A DNA stretch of 64,000 nt, from contig NW_005434633.1 in NCBI RefSeq assembly GCF_000315625.1, positions 23,677 to 87,676 on the forward strand, in the 5' to 3' direction. Shown here one piece after another: positions 10,611-64,000 of this stretch. Within the stretch, counting starts at the first letter, position 1, and every line of letters starts with the position of its first letter. A program made the position numbers and the translations under genes. Source of the stretch: Guillardia theta CCMP2712 (taxonomy: Eukaryota > Protista > Cryptophyta). The notes under the pieces are model-generated. The model saw only the letters and a program-made list of their open reading frames with translations, did not search any database and had not been told where the DNA came from.

Positions 10611-12472
10611 TCATGCAGAGAGGAAGTTGAGAGGGACGGCAGAAACAGCACCGAGGGTGAGGCCCAGCGTCTGAAGGAGAAGAAACGAAGTCACGGGGTC
10701 ACGAGGTCAGTCACGAGGTCCGTCACCATGCACAGCGCCAGCAGCGTTGAAGCCGTATCCCGCTGAGGACCTAATGGTGGATGAGGACGGAGAGCAGGCA
10801 GGAGGAGGGAGAGGGAGAGGAAGGAATAAGCGGCAATAGGAAGGGAGAGCGGGAAGGAGGGGACTCGGAAGATAAAAGGATGCAGAGGAAAGGGTACGAC
10901 AGGCATGGCAGGGAGAGGCCCGGGGAAAGAATCATGTTCACCTGTTGACACTCGCTCCTGCCCCTTGATCAAGAAGATGGTTGCCGCGAATCCATTCGAT
11001 ACTGCCTGCGAGGAAGCAGAATCAGAGGGACAAGAGGAGAAGAGGAAGAACAGACCAGGAGGCAGACGGCAAGGAAAGCTGACTCGTTGTGGAAAGGAGC
11101 GAGGACCAGGGGACTTCGCTGGAGGAGGAGGAACAAAGGGATGAGGGCAACACGAAGGACAGCGAAGCTGAGAAGGAAACGCTCGGAGAGGAGATAGCAG
11201 AGGTGCCCTCCAGCCACTCGGCCCGCCAAGTCTCCCACGTTGTACATGGCGATAAGGAGGATGGGCATCCAGTTGCGATCGTCCTGACCTGCGCATGGGA
11301 TCTTGGTGGTGATGCCAGGAAAGAGGCTGATGGTGAGCCAAAAGACGAAGAGAACTCCGATGGCGGACGGGTGGACTTTGCGGAAGACATCAATGACGGA
11401 TGCGTCTTGAGAAGCAGGAGGAGGAGGAGGAGGAAGGCCTTCCTCAGGTACTAAGATCTCTCTCTCCTCGTCATCCAGAGCGTCCTCCCTCAGATTCTGC
11501 GCATGGGATCGACTCTGCCGCACCATCGGCATCCGCAGCAAGCTGAAGAACGACAGGGTGCACAGGAGAACAACAACGAGGGAGGAGATGAAGTAGATGA
11601 TGGAGCTGGTGCGCAGGGCGTCGAAAGGAGGCAGATCGTCGAACCAAACCTTGGACAGGATGCTGGGAAAGCAGATGCGAGTCAGAGCTAGAAATCATGG
11701 GGAATGAAAGGGGAGCAACGAAATGAATCGAGTGAGTGTAAGATGAGAGATTGAACGTGTAAGAAAACATGCCAACGAGCGCCTCTGTCCTGCCCTCCGT
11801 TCACTCATATCCGCTGCCACCCCAACATGTCTCAACTCTCTCCATGTTCCTCTCCACTCTCCCTCAGGCTCTCTTCTTTCTTTCTCTCTCTCACTTTTCT
11901 TTCCCCTTTCCCTCTTCCCCCCCTCTTTCACTCCACCTCCTTCATCCTCCTCTCAGCAGAGCTCACCGGCATGTAGAAGTCAACAATCCCGCAACTGCCT
12001 GCCCGTTCATGAAGGCCCCGGTGTACGTGCTACCTACCTGCCCGGAGAGGCTGAAGAACACTGTCTGCAGCCCTGCTCCTGCTCCTCCGGCCACGCCAAC
12101 CAAACCTACCAATAGAGCGAACTGCAAAGCCTGGTCCACAGACGCTTCCTGGAAGGGCTCAGTGTATCGCCATGCCTGATACATCGGGAAAGACAGAACG
12201 GCAAAGTACAAGAACAGGCAGATGTAAGCCTTCGCCTGGAAGCATCGGAACCACTTGAGCTGTAGCAGGAAGAAGAAAAGACTGGCAGAAAAATTCGCAA
12301 TGGCGAACGCATCCGCGACGTCATATTGAGAAAACAGAGTGCTGAAGAAATCGACGGCGGAGACGAGGGAGTTCCATGGCGTAAGTGCTCCGCATCCAAG
12401 GAGGAGGAAGTAGATGAAAGTAGCAAGACTGTTTTCAGCTTCCTGCCTCTCTAGAATCGAAACATCCACCAT
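10611..12472 (-). CDS. Equilibrative nucleoside transporter (ENT/SLC29), multi-exon
   Basis: FLLLGCGALTPWNSLVSAVDFF, YTGAFMNGQAVAG, VFWLTISLFPG, YNVGDLAGR, LRVALIPLF, NGFAATIF are ENT signatures. Confidence 0.92.
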
Positions 12473-13220
12473 CTCGTGAGCCGTCTGCTATTCTATTCTA
12501 AAAAGAGATCATGCACCATCTTTTCCGATACTACAACACCAGCTGCAATGACGGCGCTTCTCCTGCATAAGTCGAGAGTCAGCAACTACAAATTCTTCCA
12601 AATCCACATGCTCTTAAACAGGCATTCTAAACAATTATGCCAGAAGACTCATCCTTCGTCAACAGCAGATTCCAAGAACTCTCTGAACCTGCATCCTTCC
12701 TTCCAAACTTGTCGGGTTATGATCAGATTCTTATCCTCCACTCTTCCTCTTGGCTATCTGGATTTCGTAATATCCGCTCTCGTCCTCCTCCTCCTCCTCC
12801 TCCTCCTCCTCCTCCTCAACCTCAACCTCCGCAACAACAACCCCATGATTATACGGAGGCATGGGTATACCAACAAACCCGCCTCAACAGAAAACTAGGA
12901 AAAGGAAAAGGCAGACAAAACCTCTCCTGCAACCACGTTTACTCAAAGTTAAGTTAAAATTCAGTGAGAGGACAATCACGGGTGACTTCGCCCTTTACTC
13001 AAAGCTAAGTTAAAAAGAAGTACGGGTGACAGTTGATGAGAGTCCTGAATGAAAAAAAAAAACATCAATCCTACCAGAGAGATGCTGCCTTTCCTCTTTT
13101 CTACTCTCTGACTCTGAGGTCAGCGCGATCTTCTATCAGACACCCCCCCCCCCGATAGGTCCCGCCTTGTTTCACTTCGGCCCAACGACCGCGGCTTCTT
13201 CCGCTGCGCCGGCAGCGACT

Positions 13221-14135
13221 ATGGCAGAGCAAGAACAGCTCTTCAGGCTGCGTGGCAGCGGTACCATAGCGCACTTGTCGACCACGCGCACCATGCCCCT
13301 CCAGGTCCTCGCTACGGTCTTCAAGGTAGGAGCGTATCAACGACATAGCCTCGAGCTCGGTTACAGCGACGTGGAGAAGCTTGAGCGAGGCAAGGCGTCT
13401 TCGCAGCGGTTCTGCATGAAGCTCAATGCTTGCTTCCAGTCCAAGGTCCCCCAGAGCCTGCCGCCAAGCATGCTCTTTGACGGAACCTCTGAGAGCAAGC
13501 GAGGCGATCCTCACGTCGGGATGGTTTGTCAAGCTGACATGACGGTCTGTTTGAAGCACGATGCGTATCTCTCTGTCTTGCTCCAGACCGTGATAGACAA
13601 CCCAGCGAGCGACGTCATAGCAGTCATGCCGGGCCCGGCGGGGTCGGCGGATTACAAGCAAGTACATGTCAAACAGCACGAGTACATCTCGTTCGAGATG
13701 GCAGAGACGCCAGACAAGGTGTGCGAAAAGATCTACCAGCTCAGCCGGCTATGTCACGTTCTGAAGGAGGAGTTTATCGGAGAGCAAGCGAGGATTGCAG
13801 CTACGGGGATACTGGTGAATGGCAAGAGAGAAGACTTCGAGCTCGGGGCTGAGGTAGTGAGATCGTTCTTGTCAGAGGCCAAGGCTGATCCCGACCTTTG
13901 CGAGCTTTTCGACTGGCAAGTGCCCATGTTTGTGTGCTATGCTCCCATTCGAACAGATCTCGATGCCAGCAGGTCAGAAATCGAGCTCTTCATGTCGCAG
14001 ATCCAGACGGAAGTCGCTGCGATCAGATCAAGAGACAAGACCCTCCTCAACGGACTAGCAGCATACATGTCGGACGACTACTTTCATTGCAAGGCTGACG
14101 CCATGAATGACCTTAACGCTAGAGAATCTTCTTGA
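13221..14135 (+). CDS. ORF311 family copy A1 (304 aa), putative degenerate PD-(D/E)xK nuclease-fold protein
   Basis: Intronless ORF from the ATG at 13221. Motif QADMTV..FEMAE..KIYQLSR..TGILVNG. Variant C-terminus. The fold call is inference. Confidence 0.7.
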   Translation: MAEQEQLFRLRGSGTIAHLSTTRTMPLQVLATVFKVGAYQRHSLELGYSDVEKLERGKASSQRFCMKLNACFQSKVPQSLPPSMLFDGTSESKRGDPHVGMVCQADMTVCLKHDAYLSVLLQTVIDNPASDVIAVMPGPAGSADYKQVHVKQHEYISFEMAETPDKVCEKIYQLSRLCHVLKEEFIGEQARIAATGILVNGKREDFELGAEVVRSFLSEAKADPDLCELFDWQVPMFVCYAPIRTDLDASRSEIELFMSQIQTEVAAIRSRDKTLLNGLAAYMSDDYFHCKADAMNDLNARESS

Positions 14136-14970
14136 CTATCTCAATCGACCAGAAACAGAAGATACCGAGTGATGTAGAAGCGCGATGCTGTTAGGCTGCC
14201 GTCAGCTTGCGCCGGGACCCAGTCCCTGGCACAGTGCGGGAGGAGAGACATAGTTTGCGAATAGCTTGAAGCCGCCTCCTGTTGCGATCGTAATACATCA
14301 CAGCTGTCCCTGTCACAGCCTTGGTAATTAATGCTGCTTATGGTCGAGACGATGTGCGGCCTGCAGCCGCTTGACCAGACTGCTCGCGTCATGATCACAA
14401 CCGACTCGAAATACTTTCAATGCGCTTGTTATTCGAGTATACACAGGTCCCTCCCAAACACCTCAATCCCCAACAACGCTCTGCTCCTCCTTCTGTCTCA
14501 TCTCACGCGCCGCAGTCTCGATGTGAACCAGGAACCCGCCAAGCAAGCTTCAGCTCGCGCCTGCTGCATCCTTGCCACAGCTCACCTATCGAACTCCTCT
14601 TTGATGAGGTCATGGCTCTCTTCCAGCGTCGTCGAGACCACGTGCACCTGCGCTAGTGACTGGGGGATCGCGCTCCTACTCGACTTCACGTCCTGCGACT
14701 CGTGCCCCACTATGACCACTGAGCGAGCATGCCGGGCCCTCTGGCGCGGACTTGCTGTAGCTGAAGACGACTGTCGGATCTTGTCGTTGTCTGCTTCGAA
14801 ACGAAAAAAAAAACATCAATCCTACCAGAGAGATGCTGCCTTTCCTCTTTTCTACTCTCTGACTCTGAGGTCAGCGCGATCTTCTATCAGACACCCCCCC
14901 CCCCATAGGTCCCGCCTTGTTTCACTTCGGCCCAACGACCGCGGCTTCTTCCGCTGCGCCGGCAGCGACT

Positions 14971-15906
14971 ATGGCAGAGCAAGAACAGCTCTTCAGGCTG
15001 CGTGGCAGCGGTACCATAGCGCACTTGTCGACCACGCGCACCATGCCCCTCCAGGTCCTCGCTGCGGTCTTCAAGGTAGGAGCGTATCAACGACATAGCC
15101 TCAAGCTCGATTACAGCGACGTGGAGAAGCTTGAGCGAGGCAAGGCGTCTTTGCAGCGGTTCTGCATGAAGCTCAATGCTTGCTTCCAGTCCAAGGTCCC
15201 CCAGAGCCTGCCGCCAAGCATGCTCTTTGACGGAACCTCTGAGAGCAAGCGAGGCGATCCTCACGTCGGGATGGTTTGTCAAGCTGACATGACGGTCTGT
15301 TTGAAGCACGATGCGTATCTCTCTGTCTTGCTCCAGACCGTGATAGACAACCCAGCGAGCGACGTCATAGCAGTCATGCCGGGCCCGGCGGGGTCGGCGG
15401 ATTACAAGCAAGTACATGTCAAACAGCACGAGTACATCTCGTTCGAGATGGCAGAGACGCCAGACAAGGTGTGCGAAAAGATCTACCAGCTCAGCCGGCT
15501 ATGTCACGTTCTGAAGGAGGAGTTTATCGGAGAGCAAGCGAGGATTGCAGCTACGGGGATACTGGTGAATGGCAAGAGAGAAGACTTCGAGCTCGGGGCT
15601 GAGGTAGTGAGATCGTTCTTGTCAGAGGCCAAGGCTGATCCCGACCTTTGCGAGCTTTTCGACTGGCAAGTGCCCATGTTTGTGTGCTATGCTCCCATTC
15701 GAACAGATCTCGATGCCAGCAGGTCAGAAATCGAGCTCCTCAGGATGGAAGTCGCTGACATGAGATCAAGAGACAAGGCCCTCAGAGCAGAGCTCCTCAA
15801 CGGACTAGCAGCATACATGTCGGACGACTACTTTCATTGCAAGGCTGACGCCATGAATGACCTTAACCATCTCTGTGACTACCTCGACGAAGATGAGACC
15901 GAGTGA
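14971..15906 (+). CDS. ORF311 family copy A2 (311 aa)
   Basis: Near-identical to A1; intact ORF. Confidence 0.7.
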   Translation: MAEQEQLFRLRGSGTIAHLSTTRTMPLQVLAAVFKVGAYQRHSLKLDYSDVEKLERGKASLQRFCMKLNACFQSKVPQSLPPSMLFDGTSESKRGDPHVGMVCQADMTVCLKHDAYLSVLLQTVIDNPASDVIAVMPGPAGSADYKQVHVKQHEYISFEMAETPDKVCEKIYQLSRLCHVLKEEFIGEQARIAATGILVNGKREDFELGAEVVRSFLSEAKADPDLCELFDWQVPMFVCYAPIRTDLDASRSEIELLRMEVADMRSRDKALRAELLNGLAAYMSDDYFHCKADAMNDLNHLCDYLDEDETE

Positions 15907-16931
15907 TGTAGAAGCGCGATGCTGTAAGGCTGCCGTCAGCTTGCGCCGGGACCCAGTCCCTGGCACAGTGCGGGAGGAGAGACATAGTTTGCGAATAGCT
16001 TGAAGCCGCCTCCTGTTGCGATCGTAATACATCACAGCTGTCCCTGTCACAGCCTTGGTAATTAATGCTGCTTATGGTCGAGACGATGTGCGGCCTGCAT
16101 TCACACCCGCCGTCGGGATGCCCACCGATGTGTCCAGACCTCTCCCGACAGCCCGGCCGGCTGACAGCAGAGCACAGCCCGCATCTACCTCCCGACTAGT
16201 ATCGCCACAGCCTGCATGGTCTCCTACCCACGTGGGATGTTACTGCAAGCCCGCTCCCGAGCGCCCATGAAGCGGACTACTCGGATCTCTGCTCTCCGCA
16301 CTCTCCCAAGTGAGGCTCAAGTGCAGCACCTTGACCAGACTGCTCGCGTCACGATCACAACCGACTCGAAATACTTTCAATGCGCTTGTTATTCGAGTAT
16401 ACACAGGTCCCTCCCAAACACCTCAATCCCCAACAACGCTCTGCTCCTCCTTCTGTCTCATCTCACGCGCCGCAGTCTCGATGTGAACCAGGAACCCGCC
16501 AAGCAAGCTTCAGCTCGCGCCTGCTGCATCCTTGCCACAGCTCACCTATCGAACTCCTCTTTGATGAGGTCATGGCTCTCTTCCAGCGTCGTCGAGACCA
16601 CGTGCACCTGCGCTAGTGACTGGGGGATCGCGCTCCTACTCGACTTCACGTCCTGCGACTCGTGCCCCACTATGACCACTGAGCGAGCATGCCGGGCCCT
16701 CTGGCGCGGACTTGCTGTAGCTGAAGACGACTGTCGGATCTTGTCGTTGTCTGCTTCGAAACGAAAAAAAAAACATCAATCCTACCAGAGAGATGCTGCC
16801 TTTCCTCTTTTCTACTCTCTGACTCTGAGGTCAGCGCGATCTTCTATCAGACACCCCCCCCCCCGATAGGTCCCGCCTTGTTTCACTTCGGCCCAACGAC
16901 CGCGGCTTCTTCCGCTGCGCCGGCAGCGACT

Positions 16932-17867
16932 ATGGCAGAGCAAGAACAGCTCTTCAGGCTGCGTGGCAGCGGTACCATAGCGCACTTGTCGACCACGCGC
17001 ACCATGCCCCTCCAGGTCCTCGCTGGGGTCTTCAAGGTAGGAGCGTATCAACGACATAGCCTCGAGCTCGGTTACAGCGACGTGAAGAAGCTCGAGCGAG
17101 CCGAGGCGTCTTTGCAGCGGTTCCGCATGAAGCTCAATGCTTGCTTCCAGTCCAAGGTCCCCCAGAGCCTGCCGCCAAGCATGCTCTTTGACGGAACCTC
17201 TGAGAGCAAGCGAGGCGATCCTCACGTCGGGATGGTTTGTCAAGCTGATATGACGGTCTGTTTGAAGCACGATGCGTATCTCTCTGTCTTGCTCCAGACC
17301 GTGATAGACAACCCAGCGAGCGACGTCATAGCAGTCATGCCGGGCCCGGCGGGGTCGGCGGATTACAAGCAAGTACATGTCAAACAGCACGAGTACATCT
17401 CGTTCGAGATGGCAGAGACGCCAGACAAGGTGTGCGAAAAGATCTACCAGCTCAGCCGGCTATGTCACGTTCTGAAAGAGGAGTTTATCGGAGAGCAAGC
17501 GAGGATTGCAGCTACGGGGATACTGGTGAATGGCAAGAGAGAAGACTTCGAGCTCGGGGCTGAGGTAGTGAGATCGTTCTTGTCAGAGGCCAAGGCTGAT
17601 CCCGACCTTTGCGAGCTTTTCGACTGGCAAGTGCCCATGTTTGTGTGCTATGCTCCCATTCGAACAGATCTCGATGCCTGCAGGTCAGAAATCGAGCTCC
17701 TCAGGATGGAAGTCGCTGACATGAGATCAAGAGACAAGGCCCTCAGAGCAGAGCTCTTCAACGGACTAGAAGCATACATGTCGGACGACTACTTTCATTG
17801 CAAGGCTGACGCCATGAATGACCTTAACCATCTCTGTGACTACCTCGACGAAGATGAGACCGAGTGA
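16932..17867 (+). CDS. ORF311 family copy A3 (311 aa)
   Basis: Near-identical to A2; intact ORF. Confidence 0.7.
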   Translation: MAEQEQLFRLRGSGTIAHLSTTRTMPLQVLAGVFKVGAYQRHSLELGYSDVKKLERAEASLQRFRMKLNACFQSKVPQSLPPSMLFDGTSESKRGDPHVGMVCQADMTVCLKHDAYLSVLLQTVIDNPASDVIAVMPGPAGSADYKQVHVKQHEYISFEMAETPDKVCEKIYQLSRLCHVLKEEFIGEQARIAATGILVNGKREDFELGAEVVRSFLSEAKADPDLCELFDWQVPMFVCYAPIRTDLDACRSEIELLRMEVADMRSRDKALRAELFNGLEAYMSDDYFHCKADAMNDLNHLCDYLDEDETE

Positions 17868-18383
17868 TGTAGAAGCGCGATGCTGTAAGGCTGCCGTCAG
17901 CTTGCGCCGGGACCCAGTCCCTGGCACAGTGCGGGAGGAGAGACATAGTTTGCGAATAGCTTGAAGCCGCCTCCTGTTGCGATCGTAATACATCACAGCT
18001 GTCCCTGTCACAGCCTTGGTAATTAATGCTGCTTATGGTCGAGACGATGTGCGGCCTGCATTCACACCCGCCGTCGGGATGCCCACCGATGCGTCAAGAC
18101 CTCTCCCGACAGCCCGGCCGGCTGACAGCAGAGCACAGCCCGCATCTACCTCCCGACTAGTATCGCCACAGCCTGCATGGTCTCCTACCCACGTGGGATG
18201 TTACTGCAAGCCCGCTCCCGAGCGCCCATGAAGCGGACTACTCGGATCTCTGCTCTCCGCACTCTCCCAAGTGAGGCTCAAGTGCAGCACCTTGACCAGA
18301 CTGCTCGCGTCACGATCACAACCGACTCGAAATACTTTCAATGCGCTTGTTATTCGAGTATACACAGGTCCCTCCCAAACACC

Positions 18384-19147
18384 TCAATCCCCAACAACGC
18401 TCTGCTCCTCCTTCTGTCTCATCTCACGCGCCGCAGTCTCGATGTGAACCAGGAACCTGCCAAGCAAGCTTCAGCTCGCGCCTGCTGCATCCTTGCCACA
18501 GCTCACCTATCGAACTCCTCTTTGATGAGGTCATGGCTCTCTTCCAGCGTCGTCGAGACCACGTGCACCTGCGCTAGTGACTTGGGGATCGCGCTCCTAC
18601 TCGGCTTGACGTCCTGCGACTTTCTGTGTGCCATGATCATACATTGACTGTCCTTGAAGCCCATGTTCTGCCCAAACCATCTGTGCCTGCTCACCAAGAT
18701 CAGCCAGCACACAGCAGAAAAGGGTCTCACCATTGATCCAGATCCTTCTCCTCCCCAGCGTTCCCAGCGTCGTACACATAGATTGCTCCCATGGCTCCAT
18801 GCATGATCGCCGGCCATGCTGCTTCGTAGGCCCTATCCCCTGACACATCCCACAGCTCCACAGAAACATTCACCTTCAAGGAACACAAAGTGAGTGAGCG
18901 ATGGAGGGAGCAGGGGTGAGGGAGGGAAGGGACAGAAGCTTAAAGAGAGAGATCAAGGAAAGCACATCACCGATCCTGTCCCTTTCCTCACAGTTCGATC
19001 AAACTCCAGGATTCTAGTACCAACCGTCGGCTTGGTGGGAGCCATGGACGGGTTTTCACAGTTCTGAACAGCATCTGCCAAGAAGTTTGCAAGAGAAGAT
19101 TTGCCGCTCGACTTTGGTCCCACCATTAGGATTTTGACCTCCGTCAT
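18384..19147 (-). CDS. IFT22: Intraflagellar transport protein 22 (RABL5-like small GTPase), 4 exons
   Basis: Spliced product MTEVKILMVGPKSSGKSSLANFLADA..PTVGTRILEF..VELWDVSGDRAYEAAWPAI..QCMIMAHRK..IKEEFDRFL..EEQSVVGD* matches the RABL5/IFT22 pattern. Confidence 0.9.
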
Positions 19148-43221: not shown

Positions 43222-43255
<34 letters not shown>

Positions 43256-49603: not shown

Positions 49604-49942
49604 TTGGAGCGAGAGGGAGACGGAGAGGGGAAGGGGAAGAAGGAGAGGGAGAGGGAGAGGAGAGGGGGAAGGAGAGGGAGAGGAAAGGAAGAGGAGAGGG
49701 AGACGGAGACGGAGACGAAGACGGAGACGGAGAAAGGAGGAAAAGGGAGAGGGAGAGGGAGAGGGAGAGGGAGAGGGAGAGGGAGAGGGAGAGGGAGAGG
49801 CGAGGGGTAGACGTAGAGGGAGAGGGAGAGGGAGAGGGAGGGGGAGAGGGAAAGCAAGAGGGAGACGGAGACGGAGATGGGGAGGGAGGGCGAAAGGAAG
49901 AGGGAGGAGCGAGAGCAAGAGCGAGAGGGGAAGAGGGAGGGC
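49604..49942. repeat. Purine-rich (GGGAGA/GGAGAC)n tract flanked by the 9-bp direct repeat GAGGTCTTG
   Basis: GAGGTCTTG at 49595-49603 and 49943-49951. Confidence 0.8.
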
Positions 49943-50178
49943 GAGGTCTTGACGCATCGGTGGGCATCCCGACGGCGGGTGTGAATGCAGGCCGCACATC
50001 GTCTCGACCATAAGCAGCATTAATTACCAAGGCTGTGACAGGGACAGCTGTGATGTATTACGATCGCAACAGGAGGCGGCTTCAAGCTATTCGCAAACTA
50101 TGTCTCTCCTCCCGCACTGTGCCAGGGACTGGGTCCCGGCGCAAGCTGACGGCAGCCTAACAGCATCGCGCTTCTACA

Positions 50179-51114
50179 TCACTCGGGAATTTCTTCGTTG
50201 AGGTAGTCATAGAGATCGTTAAGCGCATTCATGGCGTCAGCCTTGCAATGAAAGTAGTCGTCCGACATGTATGCTGCTAGTCCGTTGAAGAGCTCTGCTC
50301 TGAGGGCCTTGTCTCTTGATCTCATGTCAGCGACTTCCATCCTGAGGAGCTCGATTTCTGACCTGCAGGCATCGAGATCTGTTCGAATGGGAGCATAGCA
50401 CACAAACATGGGCACTTGCCAGTCGAAAAGCTCGCAAAGGTCGGGATCAGCCTTGGCCTCTGACAAGAACGATCTCACTACCTCAGCCCCGAGCTCGAAG
50501 TCTTCTCTCTTGCCATTCACCAGTATCCCCGTAGCTGCAATCCTCGCTTGCTCTCCGATAAACTCCTCCTTCAGAACGTGACATAGCCGGCTGAGCTGGT
50601 AGATCTTTTCGCACACCTTGTCTGGCGTCTCTGCCATCTCGAACGAGATGTACTCGTGCTGTTTGACATGTACTTGCTTGTAATCCGCCGACCCCGCCGG
50701 GCCCGGCATGACTGCTATGACGTCGCTCGCTGGGTTGTCTATCACGGTCTGGAGCAAGACAGAGAGATACGCATCGTGCTTCAAACAGACCGTCATGTCA
50801 GCTTGACAAACCATCCCCTCGTGAGGATCGCCTCGCTCGCTCTCTGAGGTTCCGTTAAAGAGCATGCTTGGCGGCAGGCTCTGGGGGACCTTGGACTGGA
50901 AGCAAGCATTGAGCTTCATGCGGAACCGCTGCAAAGACGCCTTGCCTCGCTCGAGCTTCTTCACGTCGCTGTAACCGAGCTCGAGGCTATGTCGTTGATA
51001 CGCTCCTACCTTGAAGACCGCAGCGAGGACCTGGAGGGGCATGGTGCGCGTGGTCGACAAGTGCGCTATGGTACCGCTGCCACGCAGCCTGAAGAGCTGT
51101 TCTTCCTCTGCCAT
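50179..51114 (-). CDS. ORF311 family copy B1
   Basis: Intact 311 aa; C-terminus NALNDLYDYLNEEIPE. Confidence 0.7.
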   Translation of the reverse strand: MAEEEQLFRLRGSGTIAHLSTTRTMPLQVLAAVFKVGAYQRHSLELGYSDVKKLERGKASLQRFRMKLNACFQSKVPQSLPPSMLFNGTSESERGDPHEGMVCQADMTVCLKHDAYLSVLLQTVIDNPASDVIAVMPGPAGSADYKQVHVKQHEYISFEMAETPDKVCEKIYQLSRLCHVLKEEFIGEQARIAATGILVNGKREDFELGAEVVRSFLSEAKADPDLCELFDWQVPMFVCYAPIRTDLDACRSEIELLRMEVADMRSRDKALRAELFNGLAAYMSDDYFHCKADAMNALNDLYDYLNEEIPE

Positions 51115-52134
51115 AGTCGCTGCCGGCGCAGCGGAAGAAGCCGCGGTCGTTGGGCCGAAGTGAAACAGGACCTATCGGGGGGGGAGTGTCTGATAGAAGA
51201 TCGCGCTGACCTCAGAGTCAGAGAGTAGAAAAGAGGAAAGGCAGCATCTCTCTGGTAGGATTGATGTTTTTTTTTTCGTTTCGAAGCAGACAACGACAAG
51301 ATCCGACAGTCGTCTTCAGCTACAGCAAGTCCGCGCCAGAGGGCCCGGCATGCTCGCTCAGTGGTCATAGTGGGGCACGAGTCGCAGGACGTGAAGTCGA
51401 GTAGGAGCGCGATCCCCCAGTCACTAGCGCAGGTGCACGTGGTCTCGACGACGCTGGAAGAGAGCCATGACCTCATCAAAGAGGAGCCTCGATAGGTGAG
51501 CTGTGGCAAGGATGCAGCAGGCGCGAGCTGAAGCTTGCTTGGCAGGTTCCTGGTTCACATCGAGACTGCGGCGCGTGAGATGAGACAGAAGGAGGAGCAG
51601 AGCGTTGTTGGGGATTGAGGTGTTTGGGAGGGACCTGTGTATACTCGAATAACAAGCGCATTGAAAGTATTTCGAGTCGGTTGTGATCATGACGCGAGCA
51701 GTCTGGTCAAGGTTCTGCACTTGAGCCTCACTTGGGAGAGTGCGGAGAGCAGAGATCCGAGTAGTCCGCTTCATGGGCGCTCGGGAGCGGGCTTGCAGTA
51801 ACATCACACGTGGGTAGGAGACCATGCAGGCAGTGGCGATACTAGTCGGGAGGTAGATGCGGGCTGTGCTCTGCTGTCAGCCGGCCGGGCTGTCGGGAGG
51901 GGTCTTGACGCATCGGTGGGCATCCCGACGGCGGGTGTGAATGCAGGCCGCACATCGTCTCGACCATAAGCAGCATTAATTACCAAGGCTGTGACAGGGA
52001 CAGCTGTGATGTATTACGATCGCAACAGGAGGCGGCTTCAAGCTATTCGCAAACTATGTCTCTCCTCCCGCACTGTGCCAGGGACTGGGTCCCGGCGCAA
52101 GCTGACGGCAGCCTAACAGCATCGCGCTTCTACA

Positions 52135-53070
52135 TCACTCGGGAATTTCTTCGTTGAGGTAGTCATAGAGATCGTTAAGCGCATTCATGGCGTCAGCCTT
52201 GCAATGAAAGTAGTCGTCCGACATGTATGCTGCTAGTCCGTTGAAGAGCTCTGCTCTGAGGGCCTTGTCTCTTGATCTCATGTCAGCGACTTCCATCCTG
52301 AGGAGCTCGATTTCTGACCTGCAGGCATCGAGATCTGTTCGAATGGGAGCATAGCACACAAACATGGGCACTTGCCAGTCGAAAAGCTCGCAAAGGTCGG
52401 GATCAGCCTTGGCCTCTGACAAGAACGATCTCACTACCTCAGCCCCGAGCTCGAAGTCTTCTCTCTTGCCATTCACCAGTATCCCCGTAGCTGCAATCCT
52501 CGCTTGCTCTCCGATAAACTCCTCCTTCAGAACGTGACATAGCCGGCTGAGCTGGTAGATCTTTTCGCACACCTTGTCTGGCGTCTCTGCCATCTCGAAC
52601 GAGATGTACTCGTGCTGTTTGACATGTACTTGCTTGTAATCCGCCGACCCCGCCGGGCCCGGCATGACTGCTATGACGTCGCTCGCTGGGTTGTCTATCA
52701 CGGTCTGGAGCAAGACAGAGAGATACGCATCGTGCTTCAAACAGACCGTCATGTCAGCTTGACAAACCATCCCCTCGTGAGGATCGCCTCGCTCGCTCTC
52801 TGAGGTTCCGTTAAAGAGCATGCTTGGCGGCAGGCTCTGGGGGACCTTGGACTGGAAGCAAGCATTGAGCTTCATGCGGAACCGCTGCAAAGACGCCTTG
52901 CCTCGCTCGAGCTTCTTCACGTCGCTGTAACCGAGCTCGAGGCTATGTCGTTGATACGCTCCTACCTTGAAGACCGCAGCGAGGACCTGGAGGGGCATGG
53001 TGCGCGTGGTCGACAAGTGCGCTATGGTACCGCTGCCACGCAGCCTGAAGAGCTGTTCTTCCTCCGCCAT
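52135..53070 (-). CDS. ORF311 family copy B2
   Basis: Intact; protein identical to B1. Confidence 0.7.
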   Translation of the reverse strand: MAEEEQLFRLRGSGTIAHLSTTRTMPLQVLAAVFKVGAYQRHSLELGYSDVKKLERGKASLQRFRMKLNACFQSKVPQSLPPSMLFNGTSESERGDPHEGMVCQADMTVCLKHDAYLSVLLQTVIDNPASDVIAVMPGPAGSADYKQVHVKQHEYISFEMAETPDKVCEKIYQLSRLCHVLKEEFIGEQARIAATGILVNGKREDFELGAEVVRSFLSEAKADPDLCELFDWQVPMFVCYAPIRTDLDACRSEIELLRMEVADMRSRDKALRAELFNGLAAYMSDDYFHCKADAMNALNDLYDYLNEEIPE

Positions 53071-54084
53071 AGTCGCTGCCGGCGCAGCGGAAGATGCCGC
53101 GGTCGTTCCCCTTCAAGGCTTGCATCATGGGCCATATTACCTTCAGTAGTAGTGTGACCTCTTCCGACATCACGCTATGTGTACGACGCTGGGAACGCTG
53201 GGGAGGAGAAGGATCTGGATCAATGGTGAGACCCTTTTCTGCTGTGTGCTGATCCGACAGTCGTCTTCAGCTACAGCAAGTCCGCGCCAGAGGGCCCGGC
53301 ATGCTCGCTCAGTGGTCATAGTGGGGCACGAGTCGCAGGACGTCAAGCCGAGTAGGAGCGCGATCCCCAAGTCACTAGCGCAGGTGCACGTGGTCTCGAC
53401 GACGCTGGAAGAGAGCCATGACCTCATCAAAGAGGAGTTCGATAGGTGAGCTGTGGCAAGGATGCAGCAGGCGCGAGCTGAAGCTTGCTTGGCAGGTTCC
53501 TGGTTCACATCGAGACTGCGGCGCGTGAGATGAGACAGAAGGAGGAGCAGAGCGTTGTTGGGGATTGAGGTGTTTGGGAGGGACCTGTGTATACTCGAAT
53601 AACAAGCGCATTGAAAGTATTTCGAGTCGGTTGTGATCGTGACGCGAGCAGTCTGGTCAAGGTGCTGCACTTGAGCCTCACTTGGGAGAGTGCGGAGAGC
53701 AGAGATCCGAGTAGTCCGCTTCATGGGCGCTCGGGAGCGGGCTTGCAGTAACATCCCACGTGGGTAGGAGACCATGCAGGCTGTGGCGATACTAGTCGGG
53801 AGGTAGATGCGGGCTGTGCTCTGCTGTCAGCCGGCCGGGCTGTCGGGAGAGGTCTGGACACATCGGTGGGCATCCCGACGGCGGGTGTGAATGCAGGCCG
53901 CACATCGTCTCGACCATAAGCAGCATTAATTACCAAGGCTGTGACAGGGACAGCTGTGATGTATTACGATCGCAACAGGAGGCGGCTTCAAGCTATTCGC
54001 AAACTATGTCTCTCCTCCCGCACTGTGCCAGGGACTGGGTCCCGGCGCAAGCTGACGGCAGCCTTACAGCATCGCGCTTCTACA

Positions 54085-55020
54085 TCACTCGGTCTCATCT
54101 TCGTCGAGGTAGTCACAGAGATGGTTAAGGTCATTCATGGCGTCAGCCTTGCAATGAAAGTAGTCGTCCGACATGTATGCTGCTAGTCCGTTGAGGAGCT
54201 CTGCTCTGAGGGCCTTGTCTCTTGATCTCATGTCAGCGACTTCCATCCTGAGGAGCTCGATTTCTGACCTGCAGGCATCGAGATCTGTTCGAATGGGAGC
54301 ATAGCACACAAACATGGGCACTTGCCAGTCGAAAAGCTCGCAAAGGTCGGGATCAGCCTTGGCCTCTGACAAGAACGATCTCACTACCTCAGCCCCGAGC
54401 TCGAAGTCTTCTCTCTTGCCATTCACCAGTATCCCCGTAGCTGCAATCCTCGCTTGCTCTCCGATAAACTCCTCCTTCAGAACGTGACATAGCCGGCTGA
54501 GCTGGTAGATCTTTTCGCACACCTTGTCTGGCGTCTCTGCCATCTCGAACGAGATGTACTCGTGCTGTTTGACATGTACTTGCTTGTAATCCGCCGACCC
54601 CGCCGGGCCCGGCATGACTGCTATGACGTCGCTCGCTGGGTTGTCTATCACGGTCTGGAGCAAGACAGAGAGATACGCATCGTGCTTCAAACAGACCGTC
54701 ATGTCAGCTTGACAAACCATCCCGACGTGAGGATCGCCTCGCTTGCTCTCAGAGGTTCCGTCAAAGAGCATGCTTGGCGGCAGGCTCTGGGGGACCTTGG
54801 ACTGGAAGCAAGCATTGAGCTTCATGCGGAACCGCTGCAAAGACGCCTTGCCTCGCTCGAGCTTCTTCACGTCGCTGTAATCGAGCTGGAGGCTATGTCG
54901 TTGATACGCTCCTACCTTGAAGACCGCAGCGAGGACCTGGAGGGGCATGGTGCGCGTGGTCGACAAGTGCGCTATGGTACCGCTGCCACGCAGCCTGAAG
55001 AGCTGTTCTTCCTCCGCCAT
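54085..55020 (-). CDS. ORF311 family copy B3
   Basis: Intact; C-terminus NDLNHLCDYLDEDETE. Confidence 0.7.
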   Translation of the reverse strand: MAEEEQLFRLRGSGTIAHLSTTRTMPLQVLAAVFKVGAYQRHSLQLDYSDVKKLERGKASLQRFRMKLNACFQSKVPQSLPPSMLFDGTSESKRGDPHVGMVCQADMTVCLKHDAYLSVLLQTVIDNPASDVIAVMPGPAGSADYKQVHVKQHEYISFEMAETPDKVCEKIYQLSRLCHVLKEEFIGEQARIAATGILVNGKREDFELGAEVVRSFLSEAKADPDLCELFDWQVPMFVCYAPIRTDLDACRSEIELLRMEVADMRSRDKALRAELLNGLAAYMSDDYFHCKADAMNDLNHLCDYLDEDETE

Positions 55021-56046
55021 AGTCGCTGCCGGCGCAGCGGAAGATGCCGCGGTCGTTCCCCTTCAAGGCTTGCATCATGGGCCCTATGGGGGGGGGGGTG
55101 TCTGATAGAAGATCGCGCTGACCTCAGAGTCAGAGAGTAGAAAAGAGGAAAGGCAGCATCTCTCTGGTAGGATTGATGTTTTTTTTTTCGTTTCGAAGCA
55201 GACAACGACAAGATCCGACAGTCGTCTTCAGCTACAGCAAGTCCGCGCCAGAGGGCCCGGCATGCTCGCTCAGTGGTCATAGTGGGGCACGAGTCGCAGG
55301 ACGTGAAGTCGAGTAGGAGCGCGATCCCCCAGTCACTAGCGCAGGTGCACGTGGTCTCGACGACGCTGGAAGAGAGCCATGACCTCATCAAAGAGGAGCC
55401 TCGATAGGTGAGCTGTGGCAAGGATGCAGCAGGCGCGAGCTGAAGCTTGCTTGGCAGGTTCCTGGTTCACATCGAGACTGCGGCGCGTGAGATGAGACAG
55501 AAGGAGGAGCAGAGCGTTGTTGGGGATTGAGGTGTTTGGGAGGGACCTGTGTATACTCGAATAACAAGCGCATTGAAAGTATTTCGAGTCGGTTGTGATC
55601 ATGACGCGAGCAGTCTGGTCAAGGTTCTGCACTTGAGCCTCACTTGGGAGAGTGCGGAGAGCAGAGATCCGAGTAGTCCGCTTCATGGGCGCTCGGGAGC
55701 GGGCTTGCAGTAACATCACACGTGGGTAGGAGACCATGCAGGCAGTGGCGATACTAGTCGGGAGGTAGATGCGGGCTGTGCTCTGCTGTCAGCCGGCCGG
55801 GCTGTCGGGAGGGGTCTTGACGCATCGGTGGGCATCCCGACGGCGGGTGTGAATGCAGGCCGCACATCGTCTCGACCATAAGCAGCATTAATTACCAAGG
55901 CTGTGACAGGGACAGCTGTGATGTATTACGATCGCAACAGGAGGCGGCTTCAAGCTATTCGCAAACTATGTCTCTCCTCCCGCACTGTGCCAGGGACTGG
56001 GTCCCGGCGCAAGCTGACGGCAGCCTTACAGCATCGCGCTTCTACA

Positions 56047-56982
56047 TCACTCGGTCTCATCTTCGTCGAGGTAGTCACAGAGATGGTTAAGGTCATTCAT
56101 GGCGTCAGCCTTGCAATGAAAGTAGTCGTCCGACATGTATGCTGCTAGTCCGTTGAAGAGCTCTGCTCTGAGGGCCTTGTCTCTTGATCTCATGTCAGCG
56201 ACTTCCATCCTGAGGAGCTCGATTTCTGACCTGCAGGCATCGAGATCTGTTCGAATGGGAGCATAGCACACAAACATGGGCACTTGCCAGTCGAAAAGCT
56301 CGCAAAGGTCGGGATCAGCCTTGGCCTCTGACAAGAACGATCTCACTACCTCAGCCCCGAGCTCGAAGTCTTCTCTCTTGCCATTCACCAGTATCCCCGT
56401 AGCTGCAATCCTCGCTTGCTCTCCGATAAACTCCTCCTTCAGAACGTGACATAGCCGGCTGAGCTGGTAGATCTTTTCGCACACCTTGTCTGGCGTCTCT
56501 GCCATCTCGAACGAGATGTACTCGTGCTGTTTGACATGTACTTGCTTGTAATCCGCCGACCCCGCCGGGCCCGGCATGACTGCTATGACGTCGCTCGCTG
56601 GGTTGTCTATCACGGTCTGGAGCAAGACAGAGAGATACGCATCGTGCTTCAAACAGACCGTCATGTCAGCTTGACAAACCATCCCGACGTGAGGATCGCC
56701 TCGCTTGCTCTCAGAGGTTCCGTCAAAGAGCATGCTTGGCGGCAGGCTCTGGGGGACCTTGGACTGGAAGCAAGCATTGAGCTTCATGCGGAACCGCTGC
56801 AAAGACGCCTTGCCTCGCTCGAGCTTCTTCACGTCGCTGTAACCGAGCTCGAGGCTATGTCGTTGATACGCTCCTACCTTGAAGACCGCAGCGAGGACCT
56901 GGAGGGGCATGGTGCGCGTGGTCGACAAGTGCGCTATGGTACCGCTGCCACGCAGCCTGAAGAGCTGTTCTTCCTCCGCCAT
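56047..56982 (-). CDS. ORF311 family copy B4
   Basis: Intact; has the full-length upstream flank. Confidence 0.7.
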   Translation of the reverse strand: MAEEEQLFRLRGSGTIAHLSTTRTMPLQVLAAVFKVGAYQRHSLELGYSDVKKLERGKASLQRFRMKLNACFQSKVPQSLPPSMLFDGTSESKRGDPHVGMVCQADMTVCLKHDAYLSVLLQTVIDNPASDVIAVMPGPAGSADYKQVHVKQHEYISFEMAETPDKVCEKIYQLSRLCHVLKEEFIGEQARIAATGILVNGKREDFELGAEVVRSFLSEAKADPDLCELFDWQVPMFVCYAPIRTDLDACRSEIELLRMEVADMRSRDKALRAELFNGLAAYMSDDYFHCKADAMNDLNHLCDYLDEDETE

Positions 56983-58109
56983 AGTCGCTGCCGGCGCAGC
57001 GGAAGATGCCGCGGTCGTTCCCCTTCAAGGCTTGCATCATGGGCCATATTACCTTCAGTAGTAGTGTGACCTCTTCCGACATCACGAGAATAGTTCCCAG
57101 ACTCCGACCATGGTAGTTTGGGAATTCTATGTTCGATGTATTGAGCAACCATCGGAAAGTTTATGCAACTCAGAGGTAAGGTGGTGGTTGTCAGACGATC
57201 TTGCCAAGATCGCTTCATGAACGCTCCTGGGAAGTATGAAAGATTGATACAATGATTTACACCAGCGGTCTCGAATGCGATTTCAAGGCCGCACATGGAA
57301 CAATTAGTTTGTTGCAAGGGAAAGTGGAGGGGCAGAACAGGAGGAATGACTGCGTTAGCCCGAACAGCAGTGTTCATGGCGTCAGGCAGCGCGACGGTGT
57401 CAAAGATTTTATAGCATGCATCCGCTTGAATGGAGGCCCGGGAGCCGAGGGCTTCTGTTGGTATGAATACGCATCTATGTTTATCTATCAGAACATGGCC
57501 CTCCAATCACAACACGAAGCCCCGATGGAGGAACTGATAATGGATGTTCGATCCATGCAAGTACAAACCTGTCAACTTGGCGAATCAGGATAAGCTGCTC
57601 AGCAAGTCTCAGGCGACATCTCCTCCTCTAGTAGTTGGCGTCCGCCCTGAAGTTCATAGAATCATCCCCTTGCCCTGATTCTAATTCCTCACATTGAACC
57701 TGCTAAGGTGATTCGGCATGTTCTGCCCGGCCGAACTCGGGACTTGAGCCAGGGCAAGGTTCCGTACTAGCCGGGAACCTTACTCTGAGCTGAGGCCACG
57801 ACGGGGCGGGCGGGCCTGCCTTCACTGTCTCGGAACTCGCCGGGCCAGGAGGGCCGCGACGGTTGCACGGGGTCGCATGAGTAATTATATGGGCCCGCAT
57901 GAATAAATTGCATGTGCTAGCACAAGTAGCCTGGCGGAATAGTTGCCGCAAGACTTGACAAGATCATGGTAGCTGGTTCTCCTGGAGGAGATTGCCGTGA
58001 GATTGACTTGCAGCCCGACAAGCATGCATTCCTTTGTTCAGCGCAACATTTCTTGGTCAGATCTTGCCTCTCCCTTCAAGCGAGTGCTCAGCCCTCCCGT
58101 GATGCGAGG

Positions 58110-61560: not shown

Positions 61561-61935
61561 CGCTGCTTGCGATGTTGCTTCAGAAATTTCTCGGTTTGAA
61601 TCGCAGAAGCTGCTGCACTTGAGCCTCATTTGGGAGAGTGCGGAGAGCAGAGATCCGAGTAGTCCGCTTCATGGGCGCTCGGGAGCGGGCTTGCAGTAAC
61701 ATCCCACGTGGGTAGGTGACCATGCAGGCTGTGGCGATACTAGTCGGGAGGTAGATGCGGGCTGTGCTCTGCTGTCAGCCGGCCGGGCTGTCGGGAGAGG
61801 TCTTGACGCATCGGTGGGCATCCCGACGGCGGGTGTGAATGCCGGCCGCACATCGTCTCGACCATAAGCAGCATTAATTACCAAGGCTGTGACAGGGACA
61901 GCTGTGATGTATTACGATCGCAACAGGAGGCGGCT

Positions 61936-62964
61936 TCAAGCTATTCGCAAACTATGTCTCTCCTCCCGCACTGTGCCAGGGACTGGGTCCCGGCGCAAGC
62001 TGACGGCAGCCTTACAGCATCGCGCTTCTACATCACTTGGTCTCATCCTTGAGGTAGTCATAGAGAGATCGTTAAGCGCATTCATGGCGTCAGCCTTGCA
62101 ATGAAAGTAGTCGTCCGACATGTATGCTGCTAGTCCGTTGAGGAGCTCTGCTCTGAGGGCCTTGTCTCTTGATCTCATGTCAGCGACTTCCATCCTGAGG
62201 AGCTCGATTTCTGACCTGCTGGCATCGAGATCTGTTCGAATGGGAGCATAGCACACAAACATGGGCACTTGCCAGTCGAAAAGCTCGCAAAGGTCGGGAT
62301 CAGCCTTGGCCTCTGACAAGAACGATCTCACTACCTCAGCCCCGAGCTCGAAGTCTTCTCTCTTGCCATTCACCAGTATCCCCGTAGCTGCAATCCTCGC
62401 TTGCTCTCCGATAAACTCCTCCTTCAGAACGTGACATAGCCGGCTGAGCTGGTAGATCTTTTCGCACACCTTGTCTGGCGTCTCTGCCATCTCGAACGAG
62501 ATGTACTCGTGCTGTTTGACATGTACTTGCTTGTAATCCGCCGACCCCGCCGGGCCCGGCATGACTGCTATGACGTCGCTCGCTGGGTTGTCTATCACGG
62601 TCTGGAGCAAGACAGAGAGATACGCATCGTGCTTCAAACAGACCGTCATGTCAGCTTGACAAACCATCCCCTCGTGAGGATCGCCTCGCTCGCTCTCAGA
62701 GGTTCCGTTAAAGAGCATGCTTGGCGGCAGGCTCTGGGGGACCTTGGACTGGAAGCAAGCATTGAGCTTCATGCGGAACCGCTGCGAAGACGCCTTGCCT
62801 CGCTCGAGCTTCTTCACGTCGCTGTAACCGAGCTCGAGGCTATGTCGTTGATACGCTCCTACCTTGAAGACCGCAGCGAGGACCTGGAGGGGCATGGTGC
62901 GCGTGGTCGACAAGTGCGCTATGGTACCGCTGCCACGCAGGAAGAGCTCTTCTTGTTCCGCCAT
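61936..62964 (-). CDS. ORF311 family copy B5, with a 1-codon N-terminal deletion and a frameshifted, extended C-terminus
   Basis: Same core sequence; an indel near 62065 changes the tail. Confidence 0.6.
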   Translation of the reverse strand: MAEQEELFLRGSGTIAHLSTTRTMPLQVLAAVFKVGAYQRHSLELGYSDVKKLERGKASSQRFRMKLNACFQSKVPQSLPPSMLFNGTSESERGDPHEGMVCQADMTVCLKHDAYLSVLLQTVIDNPASDVIAVMPGPAGSADYKQVHVKQHEYISFEMAETPDKVCEKIYQLSRLCHVLKEEFIGEQARIAATGILVNGKREDFELGAEVVRSFLSEAKADPDLCELFDWQVPMFVCYAPIRTDLDASRSEIELLRMEVADMRSRDKALRAELLNGLAAYMSDDYFHCKADAMNALNDLSMTTSRMRPSDVEARCCKAAVSLRRDPVPGTVREERHSLRIA

Positions 62965-64000
62965 AGTCGCTGCCGGCGCAGCGGAAGATGCCGCGGTCGT
63001 TCCCCTTCAAGGCTTGCATCATGGGCCATATTACCTTCAGTAGTAGTGTGACCTCTTCCGACATCACGAGAATAGTTCCCAGACTCCGACCATGGTAGTT
63101 TGGGAATTCTATGTTCGATGTATTGAGCAACCATCGGAAAGTTTATGCAACTCAGAGGTAAGGTGGTGGTTGTCAGACGATCTTGCCAAGATCGCTTCAT
63201 GAACGCTCCTGGGAATTATGAAAGATTGATACAATGATTTACACCAGCGGTCTCGAACGCGATTTCAAGGCCGCACATGGAACAATTAGTTTGTTGCAAG
63301 GGAAAGTGGAGGGGCAGAACAGGAGGAATGACTGCGTTAGCCCGAACAGCAGTGTTCATGGCGTCAGGCAGCGCGACGGTGTCAAAGATTTTATAGCATG
63401 CATCCGCTTGAATGGAGGCCCGGGAGCCGAGGGCTTCTGTTGGTATGAATACGCATCTATGTTTATCTATCAGAACATGGCCCTCCAATCACAACACGAA
63501 GCCCCGATGGAGGAACTGATAATGGATGTTCGATCCATGCAAGTACAAACCTGTCAACTTGGCGAATCAGGATAAGCTGCTCAGCAAGTCTCAGGCGACA
63601 TCTCCTCCTCTAGTAGTTGGCGTCCGCCCTGAAGTTCATAGAATCATCCCCTTGCCCTGATTCTAATTCCTCACATTGAACCTGCTAAGGTGATTCGGCA
63701 TGTTCTGCCCGGCCGAACTCGGGACTTAAGCCAGGGCAAGGTTCCGTACTAGCCGGGAACCTTACTCTGAGCTGAGGCCACGACGGGGCGGGCGGGCCTG
63801 CCTTCACTGTCTCGGAACTCGCCGGGCCAGGAGGGCCGCGACGGTTGCACGGGGTCGCATGAGTAATTATATGGGCCCGCATGAATAAATTGCATGTGCT
63901 AGCACAAGTAGCCTGGCGGAATAGTTGCCGCAAGACTTGACAAGATCATGGTAGCTGGTTCTCCTGGAGGAGATTGCCGTGAGATTGACTGCAGCCCGAC

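What the first reader, a model, noticed from the sequence alone, without database searches (positions are those of the whole stretch)
14370..18621. The repeat unit has captured the 3' half of the host IFT22 gene
Seen: the spacer of every ~1.95-kb unit is the IFT22 segment ~18291-18621 (end of exon 3, intron 3, exon 4, 3' flank), antisense to ORF311. Copies lie at ~14.37-14.70, 16.33-16.66, 51.38-51.71, 53.33-53.66 and 55.29-55.62 kb. In the third unit of array A this segment is the real gene end. The intron is retained, so capture was DNA-based. Inference: Helitron/Pack-MULE-like transduction or circle-mediated amplification. Read-through transcripts could be antisense to a flagellar gene.
Basis: seen in the sequence. 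Interest (0 to 1): 0.75.

Follow-up and report, generated by a model that had tools for sequence, protein, structure and literature searches.

The report
Tandem duplication clipped IFT22's 3' end
In the alga Guillardia theta, a local tandem duplication of an uncharacterised gene had one breakpoint inside the neighbouring flagellar gene IFT22, so each repeat carries a dead copy of IFT22's last 1.3 exons; this is an ordinary by-product of segmental duplication, not capture by a mobile element.

Summary
The window is Guillardia theta CCMP2712, contig C41. A 339-nt stretch occurs six times at 98-100% identity, and only in this window. It covers the last 115 nt of IFT22 exon 3, the 50-nt intron 3, exon 4 and the 3' flank. 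One copy (18283-18621) is the real end of single-copy IFT22. A 190-aa NCBI model, identical to an MMETSP transcript, uses that exon 4, and cryptophyte orthologues end with the same C-terminal helix.

- All five extra copies share one identical novel junction, so there was a single event.
- The last unit of array A runs without a break into the intact gene.
- The unit occurs nowhere else in the 87-Mb genome.
- It has no terminal inverted repeats.
- Its ORF belongs to a host family with about 45 matches, often in tandem clusters.

The best reading is an in-place tandem segmental duplication with its right breakpoint in IFT22 exon 3. It was expanded by unequal crossing-over and then copied in inverted orientation, 31 kb away, into a resident paralogue. 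About one third of the coding sequence was captured, not half.

Four fragments are decaying: two lost the splice acceptor and two have a frameshift. One array-B junction holds a second, 77-nt IFT22 piece from exon 2/intron 2. No transcript evidence bears on an antisense role. The case is ordinary and of low interest.

The parts
18387..19147 (-). Intact single-copy IFT22 (RABL5) gene. Exons: e1 19147-18971, e2 18873-18731, e3 18686-18507, e4 18456-18387 (includes TGA). Introns are 97, 44 and 50 nt, all GT-AG.
   Evidence: Exon translations. Exons 1 and 2 have IFT22 chains as best PDB matches. P0005 against 6ia7 IFT22 gives E 2.4e-18. P0024 (190 aa; NCBI model identical to an MMETSP transcript) matches the four exons. 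Orthologues share the exon-4 tail. Exons 1-2 occur once in the genome.
13053..18621 (+). Array A, with the ORF on the + strand. It starts with a truncated upstream piece, 13053-13166. Unit A1 is 13167-14916 and has a 222-bp deletion of unit positions 1184-1405. Unit A2 is 14917-16877, the 1961-bp reference unit. Unit A3 is 16878-18621 and runs on into IFT22.
14466..14700 (-). IFT22 fragment in unit A1: end of exon 3, intron 3 and exon 4. It carries P>S and K>Q changes, and the intron-3 acceptor AG has become GG.
16426..16660 (-). IFT22 fragment in unit A2, with the same changes as A1 (acceptor AG>GG).
16661..16877 (+). U_A, the native 5' flank of the ORF gene (unit positions 1745-1961). The novel junction 16660|16661 (GCGACT|CGTGCC) is identical at 14700|14701, 51380|51379, 53331|53330 and 55292|55291.
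   Evidence: junctions; paralogue P at C41:229 kb has the same upstream sequence for unit positions 1767-1930 at 88% identity.
49939..57258 (-). Array B, with the ORF on the - strand. It begins with a different upstream sequence, U_B (57258-57020). Units are Ba 57019-55079, Bb 55057-53251, Bc 53107-51168 and Bd 51167-49939. Bd is cut at unit position 1230 by a (GAGGGA)n tract at 49607-49939.
55292..55530 (+). IFT22 fragment in unit Ba. A 1-nt insertion near the end of exon 3 shifts the frame.
53331..53568 (+). IFT22 fragment in unit Bb, 100% identical to the real gene end. It forms part of the NCBI model GUITHDRAFT_109704 (P0007, 98 aa).
51380..51618 (+). IFT22 fragment in unit Bc, with the same frameshift as Ba.
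53175..53251 (+). Second IFT22-derived piece: 77 nt, 100% identical to 18705-18781 (last 51 nt of exon 2 plus the first 26 nt of intron 2). It lies between 80 nt of U_A and 67 nt of U_B at the Bb|Bc junction.
61607..63240 (-). Solo ORF copy C with U_B upstream. Its similarity to the units ends at unit position 1416, so it has no IFT22 coding part. It is part of a 2.4-kb repeat (61607-64000 matches 55621-58019) that runs into an assembly gap starting at 64001.

Best explanation
This is a by-product of local segmental duplication, not of transposition.

Starting arrangement (inferred). An intronless gene of a Guillardia-specific family (ORF311/329) lay tail-to-tail with IFT22, with about 520 nt between the two stop codons.

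Step 1, one illegitimate tandem duplication (shown: one junction shared by all copies; inferred: the mechanism). The left breakpoint was about 217 nt upstream of the ORF, at unit position 1745. The right breakpoint was inside IFT22 exon 3, at window 18621. This made a 1961-bp unit holding the ORF, the whole intergenic region, IFT22 exon 4, intron 3 and 115 nt of exon 3. Because the duplication was in place, the distal unit (A3) is still continuous with the intact gene.

Step 2, unequal crossing-over and gene conversion (inferred from mosaic variant patterns). These changed copy number and mixed variants between units.

Step 3, spread to a second locus (inferred). Units carrying the junction entered a resident paralogue 31 kb away in inverted orientation. 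The route was non-allelic recombination, template switching or break-induced copying. This produced array B, whose first unit keeps the resident upstream sequence U_B. One array-B junction holds a 77-nt templated piece of IFT22 exon 2/intron 2.

Status of the fragments. They have no promoter-proximal IFT22 exons and are decaying. Two lost the intron-3 acceptor and two are frameshifted. They are most likely functionless passengers.
For: - Six copies, all local, at 98-100% identity.
- The junction GCGACT|CGTGCC is identical in all five captured copies, while A3 continues into genuine exon 3.
- IFT22 exons 1-2 are single-copy.
- The real mRNA uses exon 4 in A3: P0024 equals both the NCBI model and an MMETSP transcript, and orthologues share the C-terminal tail.
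- The upstream part of the unit is native to the ORF family. Paralogue P, which has no IFT22 piece, shares unit positions 1767-1930 and positions 45-1362.
- The ORF family has about 45 matches at 31-45% identity on many contigs, several in tandem clusters.
- The unit is not dispersed.
- There are no terminal inverted repeats.
- Variant patterns are mosaic. A2 and A3 are closer to Ba and Bb than to A1, and Bc differs from Bd at 1 site.
- Fragment decay is documented.
- The A1 deletion has TGCA(G) microhomology at its edges.
- Partial-gene capture is the commonest outcome of tandem duplication in surveyed Drosophila populations: 745 partial against 248 whole genes (PMC4069613).
Against: - The left edge of array A starts at unit position 1848, at an A10 run. 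It does not continue from position 1745 into ancestral flank, so a second event (deletion or truncation) must be assumed there.
- The Bb|Bc junction needs either two template switches or a deletion from an 'extended' unit that is no longer seen.
- Sequence alone cannot separate in-place duplication from excision, amplification and homologous re-integration of a circle.
Confidence: 0.74

Rival explanations
1. Circle-mediated amplification. A 1.96-kb segment spanning the ORF and the IFT22 3' end was excised as extrachromosomal circular DNA, closing at the 1744|1745 junction. It was multiplied by rolling-circle replication or multimerisation. It then re-integrated by homologous recombination at the source locus (array A) and into a paralogue (array B).
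For: There is a single head-to-tail junction in all units. Array B looks like a multimer inserted into a resident gene: the first unit has the resident U_B and resident-type 5' variants, and the last unit (Bd) has array-A-type 5' variants. The two arrays lie in opposite orientation with no duplicated flanks.
Against: The end product is identical to that of in-place duplication plus unequal exchange, which needs fewer steps. Internal array-B units have mixed U_A/U_B 5' ends and one complex junction, which a simple multimer insertion does not predict. There is no direct evidence of circles.
Confidence: 0.13
2. Transposon-mediated gene capture (Helitron or Pack-MULE-like transduplication). The ORF-bearing unit is a mobile element that picked up the IFT22 3' end and then multiplied.
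For: A gene fragment with its intron retained sits inside a repeated unit that has an ORF of unknown function. The ORF core has weak resemblance to PD-(D/E)XK nucleases.
Against: There are no dispersed copies, no terminal inverted repeats and no target-site duplication at the array edges. The unit ends do not match Helitron 5'-TC...CTRR-3' ends (the end motif is from my own knowledge). There is no Pfam transposase or Rep domain in the ORF. No Helitron Rep hit was found in the genome, with a silent control. MULE-like hits are more than 330 kb away. The ORF family is old and divergent, with signal-peptide-like N-termini in some members. Unit A3 is collinear with the intact donor gene, which transposition would not produce.
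Confidence: 0.03
3. Assembly artefact. One or both arrays, or their copy numbers, come from mis-assembly of a Sanger-era draft.
For: The genome is a 669-contig draft. Copy C and its 2.4-kb repeat abut a 2.9-kb N gap at 64001. The units are 98-99% identical.
Against: Both arrays lie in one gap-free stretch, 8269-64000. The units differ by private variants, indels and distinct junctions. Both arrays have unique flanks.
Confidence: 0.06

Closest known systems
Partial-gene tandem (segmental) duplication, as catalogued in Drosophila populations (Rogers et al. 2014, PMC4069613)
   Same: The repeat is head-to-tail with one novel junction. One breakpoint falls inside a neighbouring gene, so a truncated gene copy with its introns is duplicated. 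The distal copy stays continuous with the intact gene. Copy number then changes by unequal exchange.
   Different: Here the array was also copied in inverted orientation into a paralogue 31 kb away. One junction carries an extra short templated piece of the same neighbour gene.
Pack-MULE or Helitron gene-fragment capture (plants, bats)
   Same: A host gene fragment with a retained intron sits inside a repeated unit, antisense to the unit's own ORF.
   Different: There are no termini, target-site duplications, transposase or Rep, or dispersed copies. The donor gene is physically continuous with one unit.
Complex rearrangements with templated insertions (FoSTeS/MMBIR or polymerase-theta end joining)
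   Same: The Bb|Bc junction joins four segments with 0-1 nt of overlap. It includes a 77-nt stretch that matches a sequence 34 kb away in cis at every base.
   Different: This mechanism is inferred from junction anatomy only. A one-step deletion from a longer precursor unit is an alternative.

Membership tests
IFT22 / RABL5 (identity of the donor gene) | Rab-like small GTPase with a P-loop at the N-terminus whose best matches are IFT22 rather than other Rabs | tested here: met
   P0005 against PDB gives IFT22 of T. brucei (6ia7) at E 2.4e-18 and Chlamydomonas IFT22 (8ruy_T) at 1.1e-13. The next best, Rab11, is at 1.5e-07. Exon-by-exon searches also put IFT22 first. A named IFT22 (barnacle) is among the homologues.
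IFT22 / RABL5 (identity of the donor gene) | Conserved C-terminal helix encoded by the last exon | tested here: met
   Exon 4 aligns with the C-termini of cryptophyte orthologues P0008-P0011 and of animal IFT22. It is present in the transcript-derived P0024.
Simple tandem segmental duplication | Head-to-tail units sharing one novel junction, with the terminal unit collinear with unique flank | tested here: met
   The junction is identical in five units and A3 continues into IFT22 exon 3.
Simple tandem segmental duplication | The proximal unit is collinear with ancestral flank at the other breakpoint | tested here: not met
   Array A starts at unit position 1848 at an A10 run. Positions 1745-1847 are absent from the left flank, so a secondary deletion must be assumed.
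Helitron | Rep/helicase protein, 5'-TC and 3'-CTRR ends with a subterminal hairpin, insertion between A and T | tested here: not met
   The ORF has no Pfam domain. The genome has no PF14214 hit, with a silent control. The unit ends are CGTGCC... and ...GCGACT. The end motif is from my own knowledge.
Pack-MULE / Mutator-like element | Long terminal inverted repeats, 8-11-bp target-site duplications, dispersed copies | tested here: not met
   There are no inverted repeats of 14 nt or more in 12700-18900. No duplication is seen at the array edges. All copies are local.
PD-(D/E)XK nuclease fold (the unit's ORF) | Alpha-beta-beta-beta-alpha-beta core with a D...(D/E)xK catalytic motif and significant structural matches | tested here: inconclusive
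   The AlphaFold model has pLDDT 75.8. Foldseek's best match is BglII at E 0.25. VIA-align gives Can2 at Z 6.2 over 126 residues, below the tool's trust level. D115 and E160 are invariant and K167 is present, but with non-canonical spacing.

The most novel reading that the evidence does not exclude
The IFT22 fragments may not be inert. Three possibilities remain open.

- Sequence exchange with the live gene. The array-B fragment Bb is base-for-base identical to the real 3' end. Proteins from other public samples (P0006, P0031) join the array-type S..Q variants to the unique 5' part of exon 3.
- Inversion. The inverted arrays could mediate inversion of the 31-kb segment between them, which would swap the 3' end that IFT22 uses.
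- Antisense RNA. Read-through from the array ORFs could give antisense or small RNAs that modulate this flagellar gene.
Probability: 0.12. Interest if true: 0.5.

Novelty: new member of a known kind. Interest (0 to 1): 0.2.

Why it matters
The main value is for annotation and caution.
- It explains a spurious NCBI gene model. GUITHDRAFT_109704 is built from IFT22 debris in array B.
- Five IFT22-like 3' ends in the genome are non-genes.
- The locus is a readable record of how this alga's lineage-specific gene families expand: tandem duplication, unequal exchange, ectopic copying and templated junctions.

It does not reveal a new type of mobile element or a demonstrated regulator of flagellar genes.

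Tried and rejected
- TE capture was rejected.
- Exon 3 alone against PDB gave nothing. Full-length database proteins settled the gene's identity instead.
- P0007 against PDB gave only chance hits.
- The ESM Atlas gave nothing for the ORF.
- One scan of JGI metagenome contigs with an exon-4 pattern found 0 matches. The tool warns that records of this genome may be left out, so this is uninformative.
The short ENA and JGI contigs that encode P0006, P0031, P0030 and P0003 therefore could not be read, and no empty site in a related strain could be examined.
- The bacterial promoter/terminator scan is irrelevant to a eukaryote and was not used.
Exons were searched one by one by reference. The spliced protein used afterwards was the database's own (P0005, P0024).
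- A literature search for Helitrons in G. theta found nothing relevant.
Full report
**Source and layout**

Protein searches name the source as Guillardia theta CCMP2712. The window is contig C41:23677-87676 of an 87.1-Mb, 669-contig assembly.

Repeat finding and BLAST define a 1961-bp unit. The reference is window 14917-16877, with position 1 at the start of the 329-codon open frame and the ATG at position 52. Unit positions are:

| Unit positions | Content |
|---|---|
| 1-990 | ORF |
| 991-1509 | Intergenic / 3' flanks |
| 1510-1579 | IFT22 exon 4, antisense |
| 1580-1629 | IFT22 intron 3 |
| 1630-1744 | Last 115 nt of IFT22 exon 3 |
| 1745-1961 | ORF's own upstream region (U_A) |

- **Array A** (+ strand) runs 13053-18621. 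Its units are A1 (with a 222-bp deletion), A2 and A3.
- **Array B** (- strand) runs 57258-49939. Its units are Ba, Bb, Bc and a truncated Bd that ends in a (GAGGGA)n tract.
- **Copy C** is a solo ORF copy at 63001-61607.
- **Paralogue P** is a more divergent copy (92% identical) at C41:229 kb.

**Check of the observation**

The 339-nt stretch 18283-18621 has exactly six matches in the whole genome.

The donor gene is IFT22.
- Exons 1 and 2, searched separately by reference, have IFT22 chains as best PDB matches.
- The database protein P0005 matches T. brucei IFT22 at E 2.4e-18 and Chlamydomonas IFT22 at 1.1e-13, well ahead of Rab11.

The spliced sequences used are the database's own.

This test is passed.
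- P0024 (190 aa) is both the NCBI model GUITHDRAFT_152994 and MMETSP Transcript_41125.
- It equals exons 19147-18971, 18873-18731, 18686-18507 and 18456-18387.
- Cryptophyte orthologues from transcriptomes end with the same helix as exon 4.
- Isoforms that retain intron 2 or intron 3 also exist (P0005, P0029, P0030).
- IFT22 exons 1-2 occur only once in the genome.

- About a third of the coding sequence (61 of 190 codons) is captured, not half.
- The segment's '18291' end is set by a deletion in A1 and by the end of copy C. It is not a capture boundary.
- Bd and C lack the piece.

**What happened**

All five captured copies share the same novel junction, GCGACT|CGTGCC. At that point A3 instead continues into genuine exon 3. 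A single event therefore made the junction, and the units were multiplied afterwards.

The sequence on the far side of the junction is the ORF's native upstream region. Paralogue P has no IFT22 sequence, yet it shares unit positions 1767-1930 upstream and 45-1362 through the gene.

The ORF is one of about 45 matches in the genome. These are 31-45% identical, spread over many contigs, often lie in local tandem clusters, and some have signal-peptide-like N-termini. This is a lineage-specific host gene family, not a young dispersed element.

The evidence against a mobile element is:
- The unit is found nowhere else.
- It has no inverted repeats of 14 nt or more.
- It has no edge duplications.
- It has no Pfam transposase or Rep domain.
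- The genome gave no Helitron Rep hit, although the control for that search was silent.
- MULE-like hits are more than 330 kb away.

The simplest account is an in-place tandem duplication of ORF gene, intergenic region and IFT22 3' end, with the right breakpoint in exon 3. Copy number then changed by unequal crossing-over. Partial-gene capture is the commonest class of tandem duplication in population surveys (PMC4069613).

**Array B and mosaicism**

The units do not group by array.
- A2 and A3 differ from Ba and Bb at 7-11 sites in unit positions 60-1180, but from A1 at 23-32 sites.
- Bc and Bd differ at 1 site.

Ba begins with a different upstream sequence, U_B, which copy C also has, and with resident-type 5' variants. 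It then switches to array-A-type sequence, including the IFT22 piece and U_A. Array B is therefore best read as junction-bearing units introduced into a resident paralogue by non-allelic recombination or copying. Further exchange followed.

The Bb|Bc junction is complex. Its parts, in order, are:
- the IFT22 fragment up to the 18621 equivalent;
- 80 nt of U_A;
- 77 nt identical to IFT22 18705-18781 (end of exon 2 plus start of intron 2);
- U_B.

This fits either two template switches or a roughly 1.96-kb deletion from a precursor unit that reached into exon 2. I cannot choose between them.

The NCBI model GUITHDRAFT_109704 (P0007) is built on this debris at 53177-53565. It uses the intron-2 donor, a cryptic acceptor in U_A, and intron 3. 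No transcript source is listed for it.

**State of the fragments**

| Fragment | State |
|---|---|
| Bb | Identical to the real gene end |
| A1, A2 | Three exon-3 substitutions (two amino-acid changes) and the intron-3 acceptor changed from AG to GG |
| Ba, Bc | The same three substitutions plus a 1-nt insertion that shifts the frame before exon 4 |

None has IFT22's promoter-proximal exons. This is decay of passengers, with Bb either young or recently converted.

**Weak points**

- The left edge of array A begins at unit position 1848, at an A10 run, rather than continuing from position 1745. A later deletion must be assumed.
- Excision as a circle, amplification and homologous re-integration would give the same structure. 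It might explain array B more naturally. Sequence alone cannot exclude it.
- The assembly is an old draft. Both arrays lie in one gap-free stretch (8269-64000) and carry private variants. Copy C and its 2.4-kb repeat run into a 2.9-kb gap at 64001.

**The ORF**

It has no Pfam domain and nothing in the ESM Atlas.

An AlphaFold model from 14 family members (pLDDT 75.8) has an alpha/beta core and a long C-terminal helical hairpin. The core's best matches are restriction enzymes (BglII at E 0.25) and the CRISPR ancillary nuclease Can2 (Z 6.2 over 126 residues). Both are below the level that shows a shared fold.

No MMETSP transcript is listed among the ORF's cluster members.

**Verdict**

The mechanism offered is not supported. 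This is an ordinary partial-gene tandem duplication with later ectopic copying. Its value is for annotation and as a readable example of how this alga's gene families grow.

A regulatory or recombinational effect on IFT22 remains possible but has no evidence here.

Noticed in passing
window 18457-18506 (IFT22 intron 3) and 18687-18730 (intron 2): Transcript-derived proteins show several IFT22 isoforms: fully spliced (P0024, 190 aa), intron 3 retained with a stop right after exon 3 (P0005, 167 aa, lacking the conserved C-terminal helix), and intron 2 retained (P0029, P0030). Intron retention in these very short introns (44-50 nt) seems frequent.
   Followed up: partly
proteins P0006 and P0031 (ENA contigs of 1154 and 1097 nt, not fetchable): Sequences from other public samples join the unique 5' part of IFT22 exon 3 to the S..Q variants, which in this genome occur only in fragments A1, A2, Ba and Bc. 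P0006 also alters the conserved DSQC..AH motif. They could be longer fragment copies or real-gene alleles in related strains. This hints at exchange between the fragments and the gene.
   Followed up: no
window 53177-53565 (+): NCBI model GUITHDRAFT_109704 (98 aa) is a chimera of out-of-frame IFT22 exon 2, antisense U_A and in-frame IFT22 exon 3/4 debris in array B. It is probably not a real gene.
   Followed up: yes
window 55621-58019 and 61607-64000; gap 64001-66939 (beyond the window): A 2.4-kb repeat at 98.5% identity carries an ORF copy plus the U_B upstream. The second copy ends in a 2.9-kb assembly gap. Between the copies lies a 666-aa ORF (58110-60110, - strand) with AAA_11 / STAND-NTPase-like matches.
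   Followed up: partly
G000 C41:229098-230966 (locus L009 4098-5966): Paralogue P (GUITHDRAFT_109752, with a signal-peptide-like N-terminus) has a 36-nt piece of the U_A upstream about 250 nt downstream of its 3' end. This is a likely relic of an older tandem pair at that locus.
   Followed up: no
window 18622-49938: The two arrays are inverted repeats of about 5.6 and 7.1 kb at 98-99% identity. They flank about 31 kb that holds IFT22, an ammonium-transporter-like ORF (21368-22093) and TrkH-like ORFs (43098-45817). This is a set-up for inversion by non-allelic recombination.
   Followed up: no
window 11963-12472 (-): A nucleoside-transporter-like exon (weak Pfam PF01733 match, E 0.0011) lies just left of array A.
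   Followed up: no
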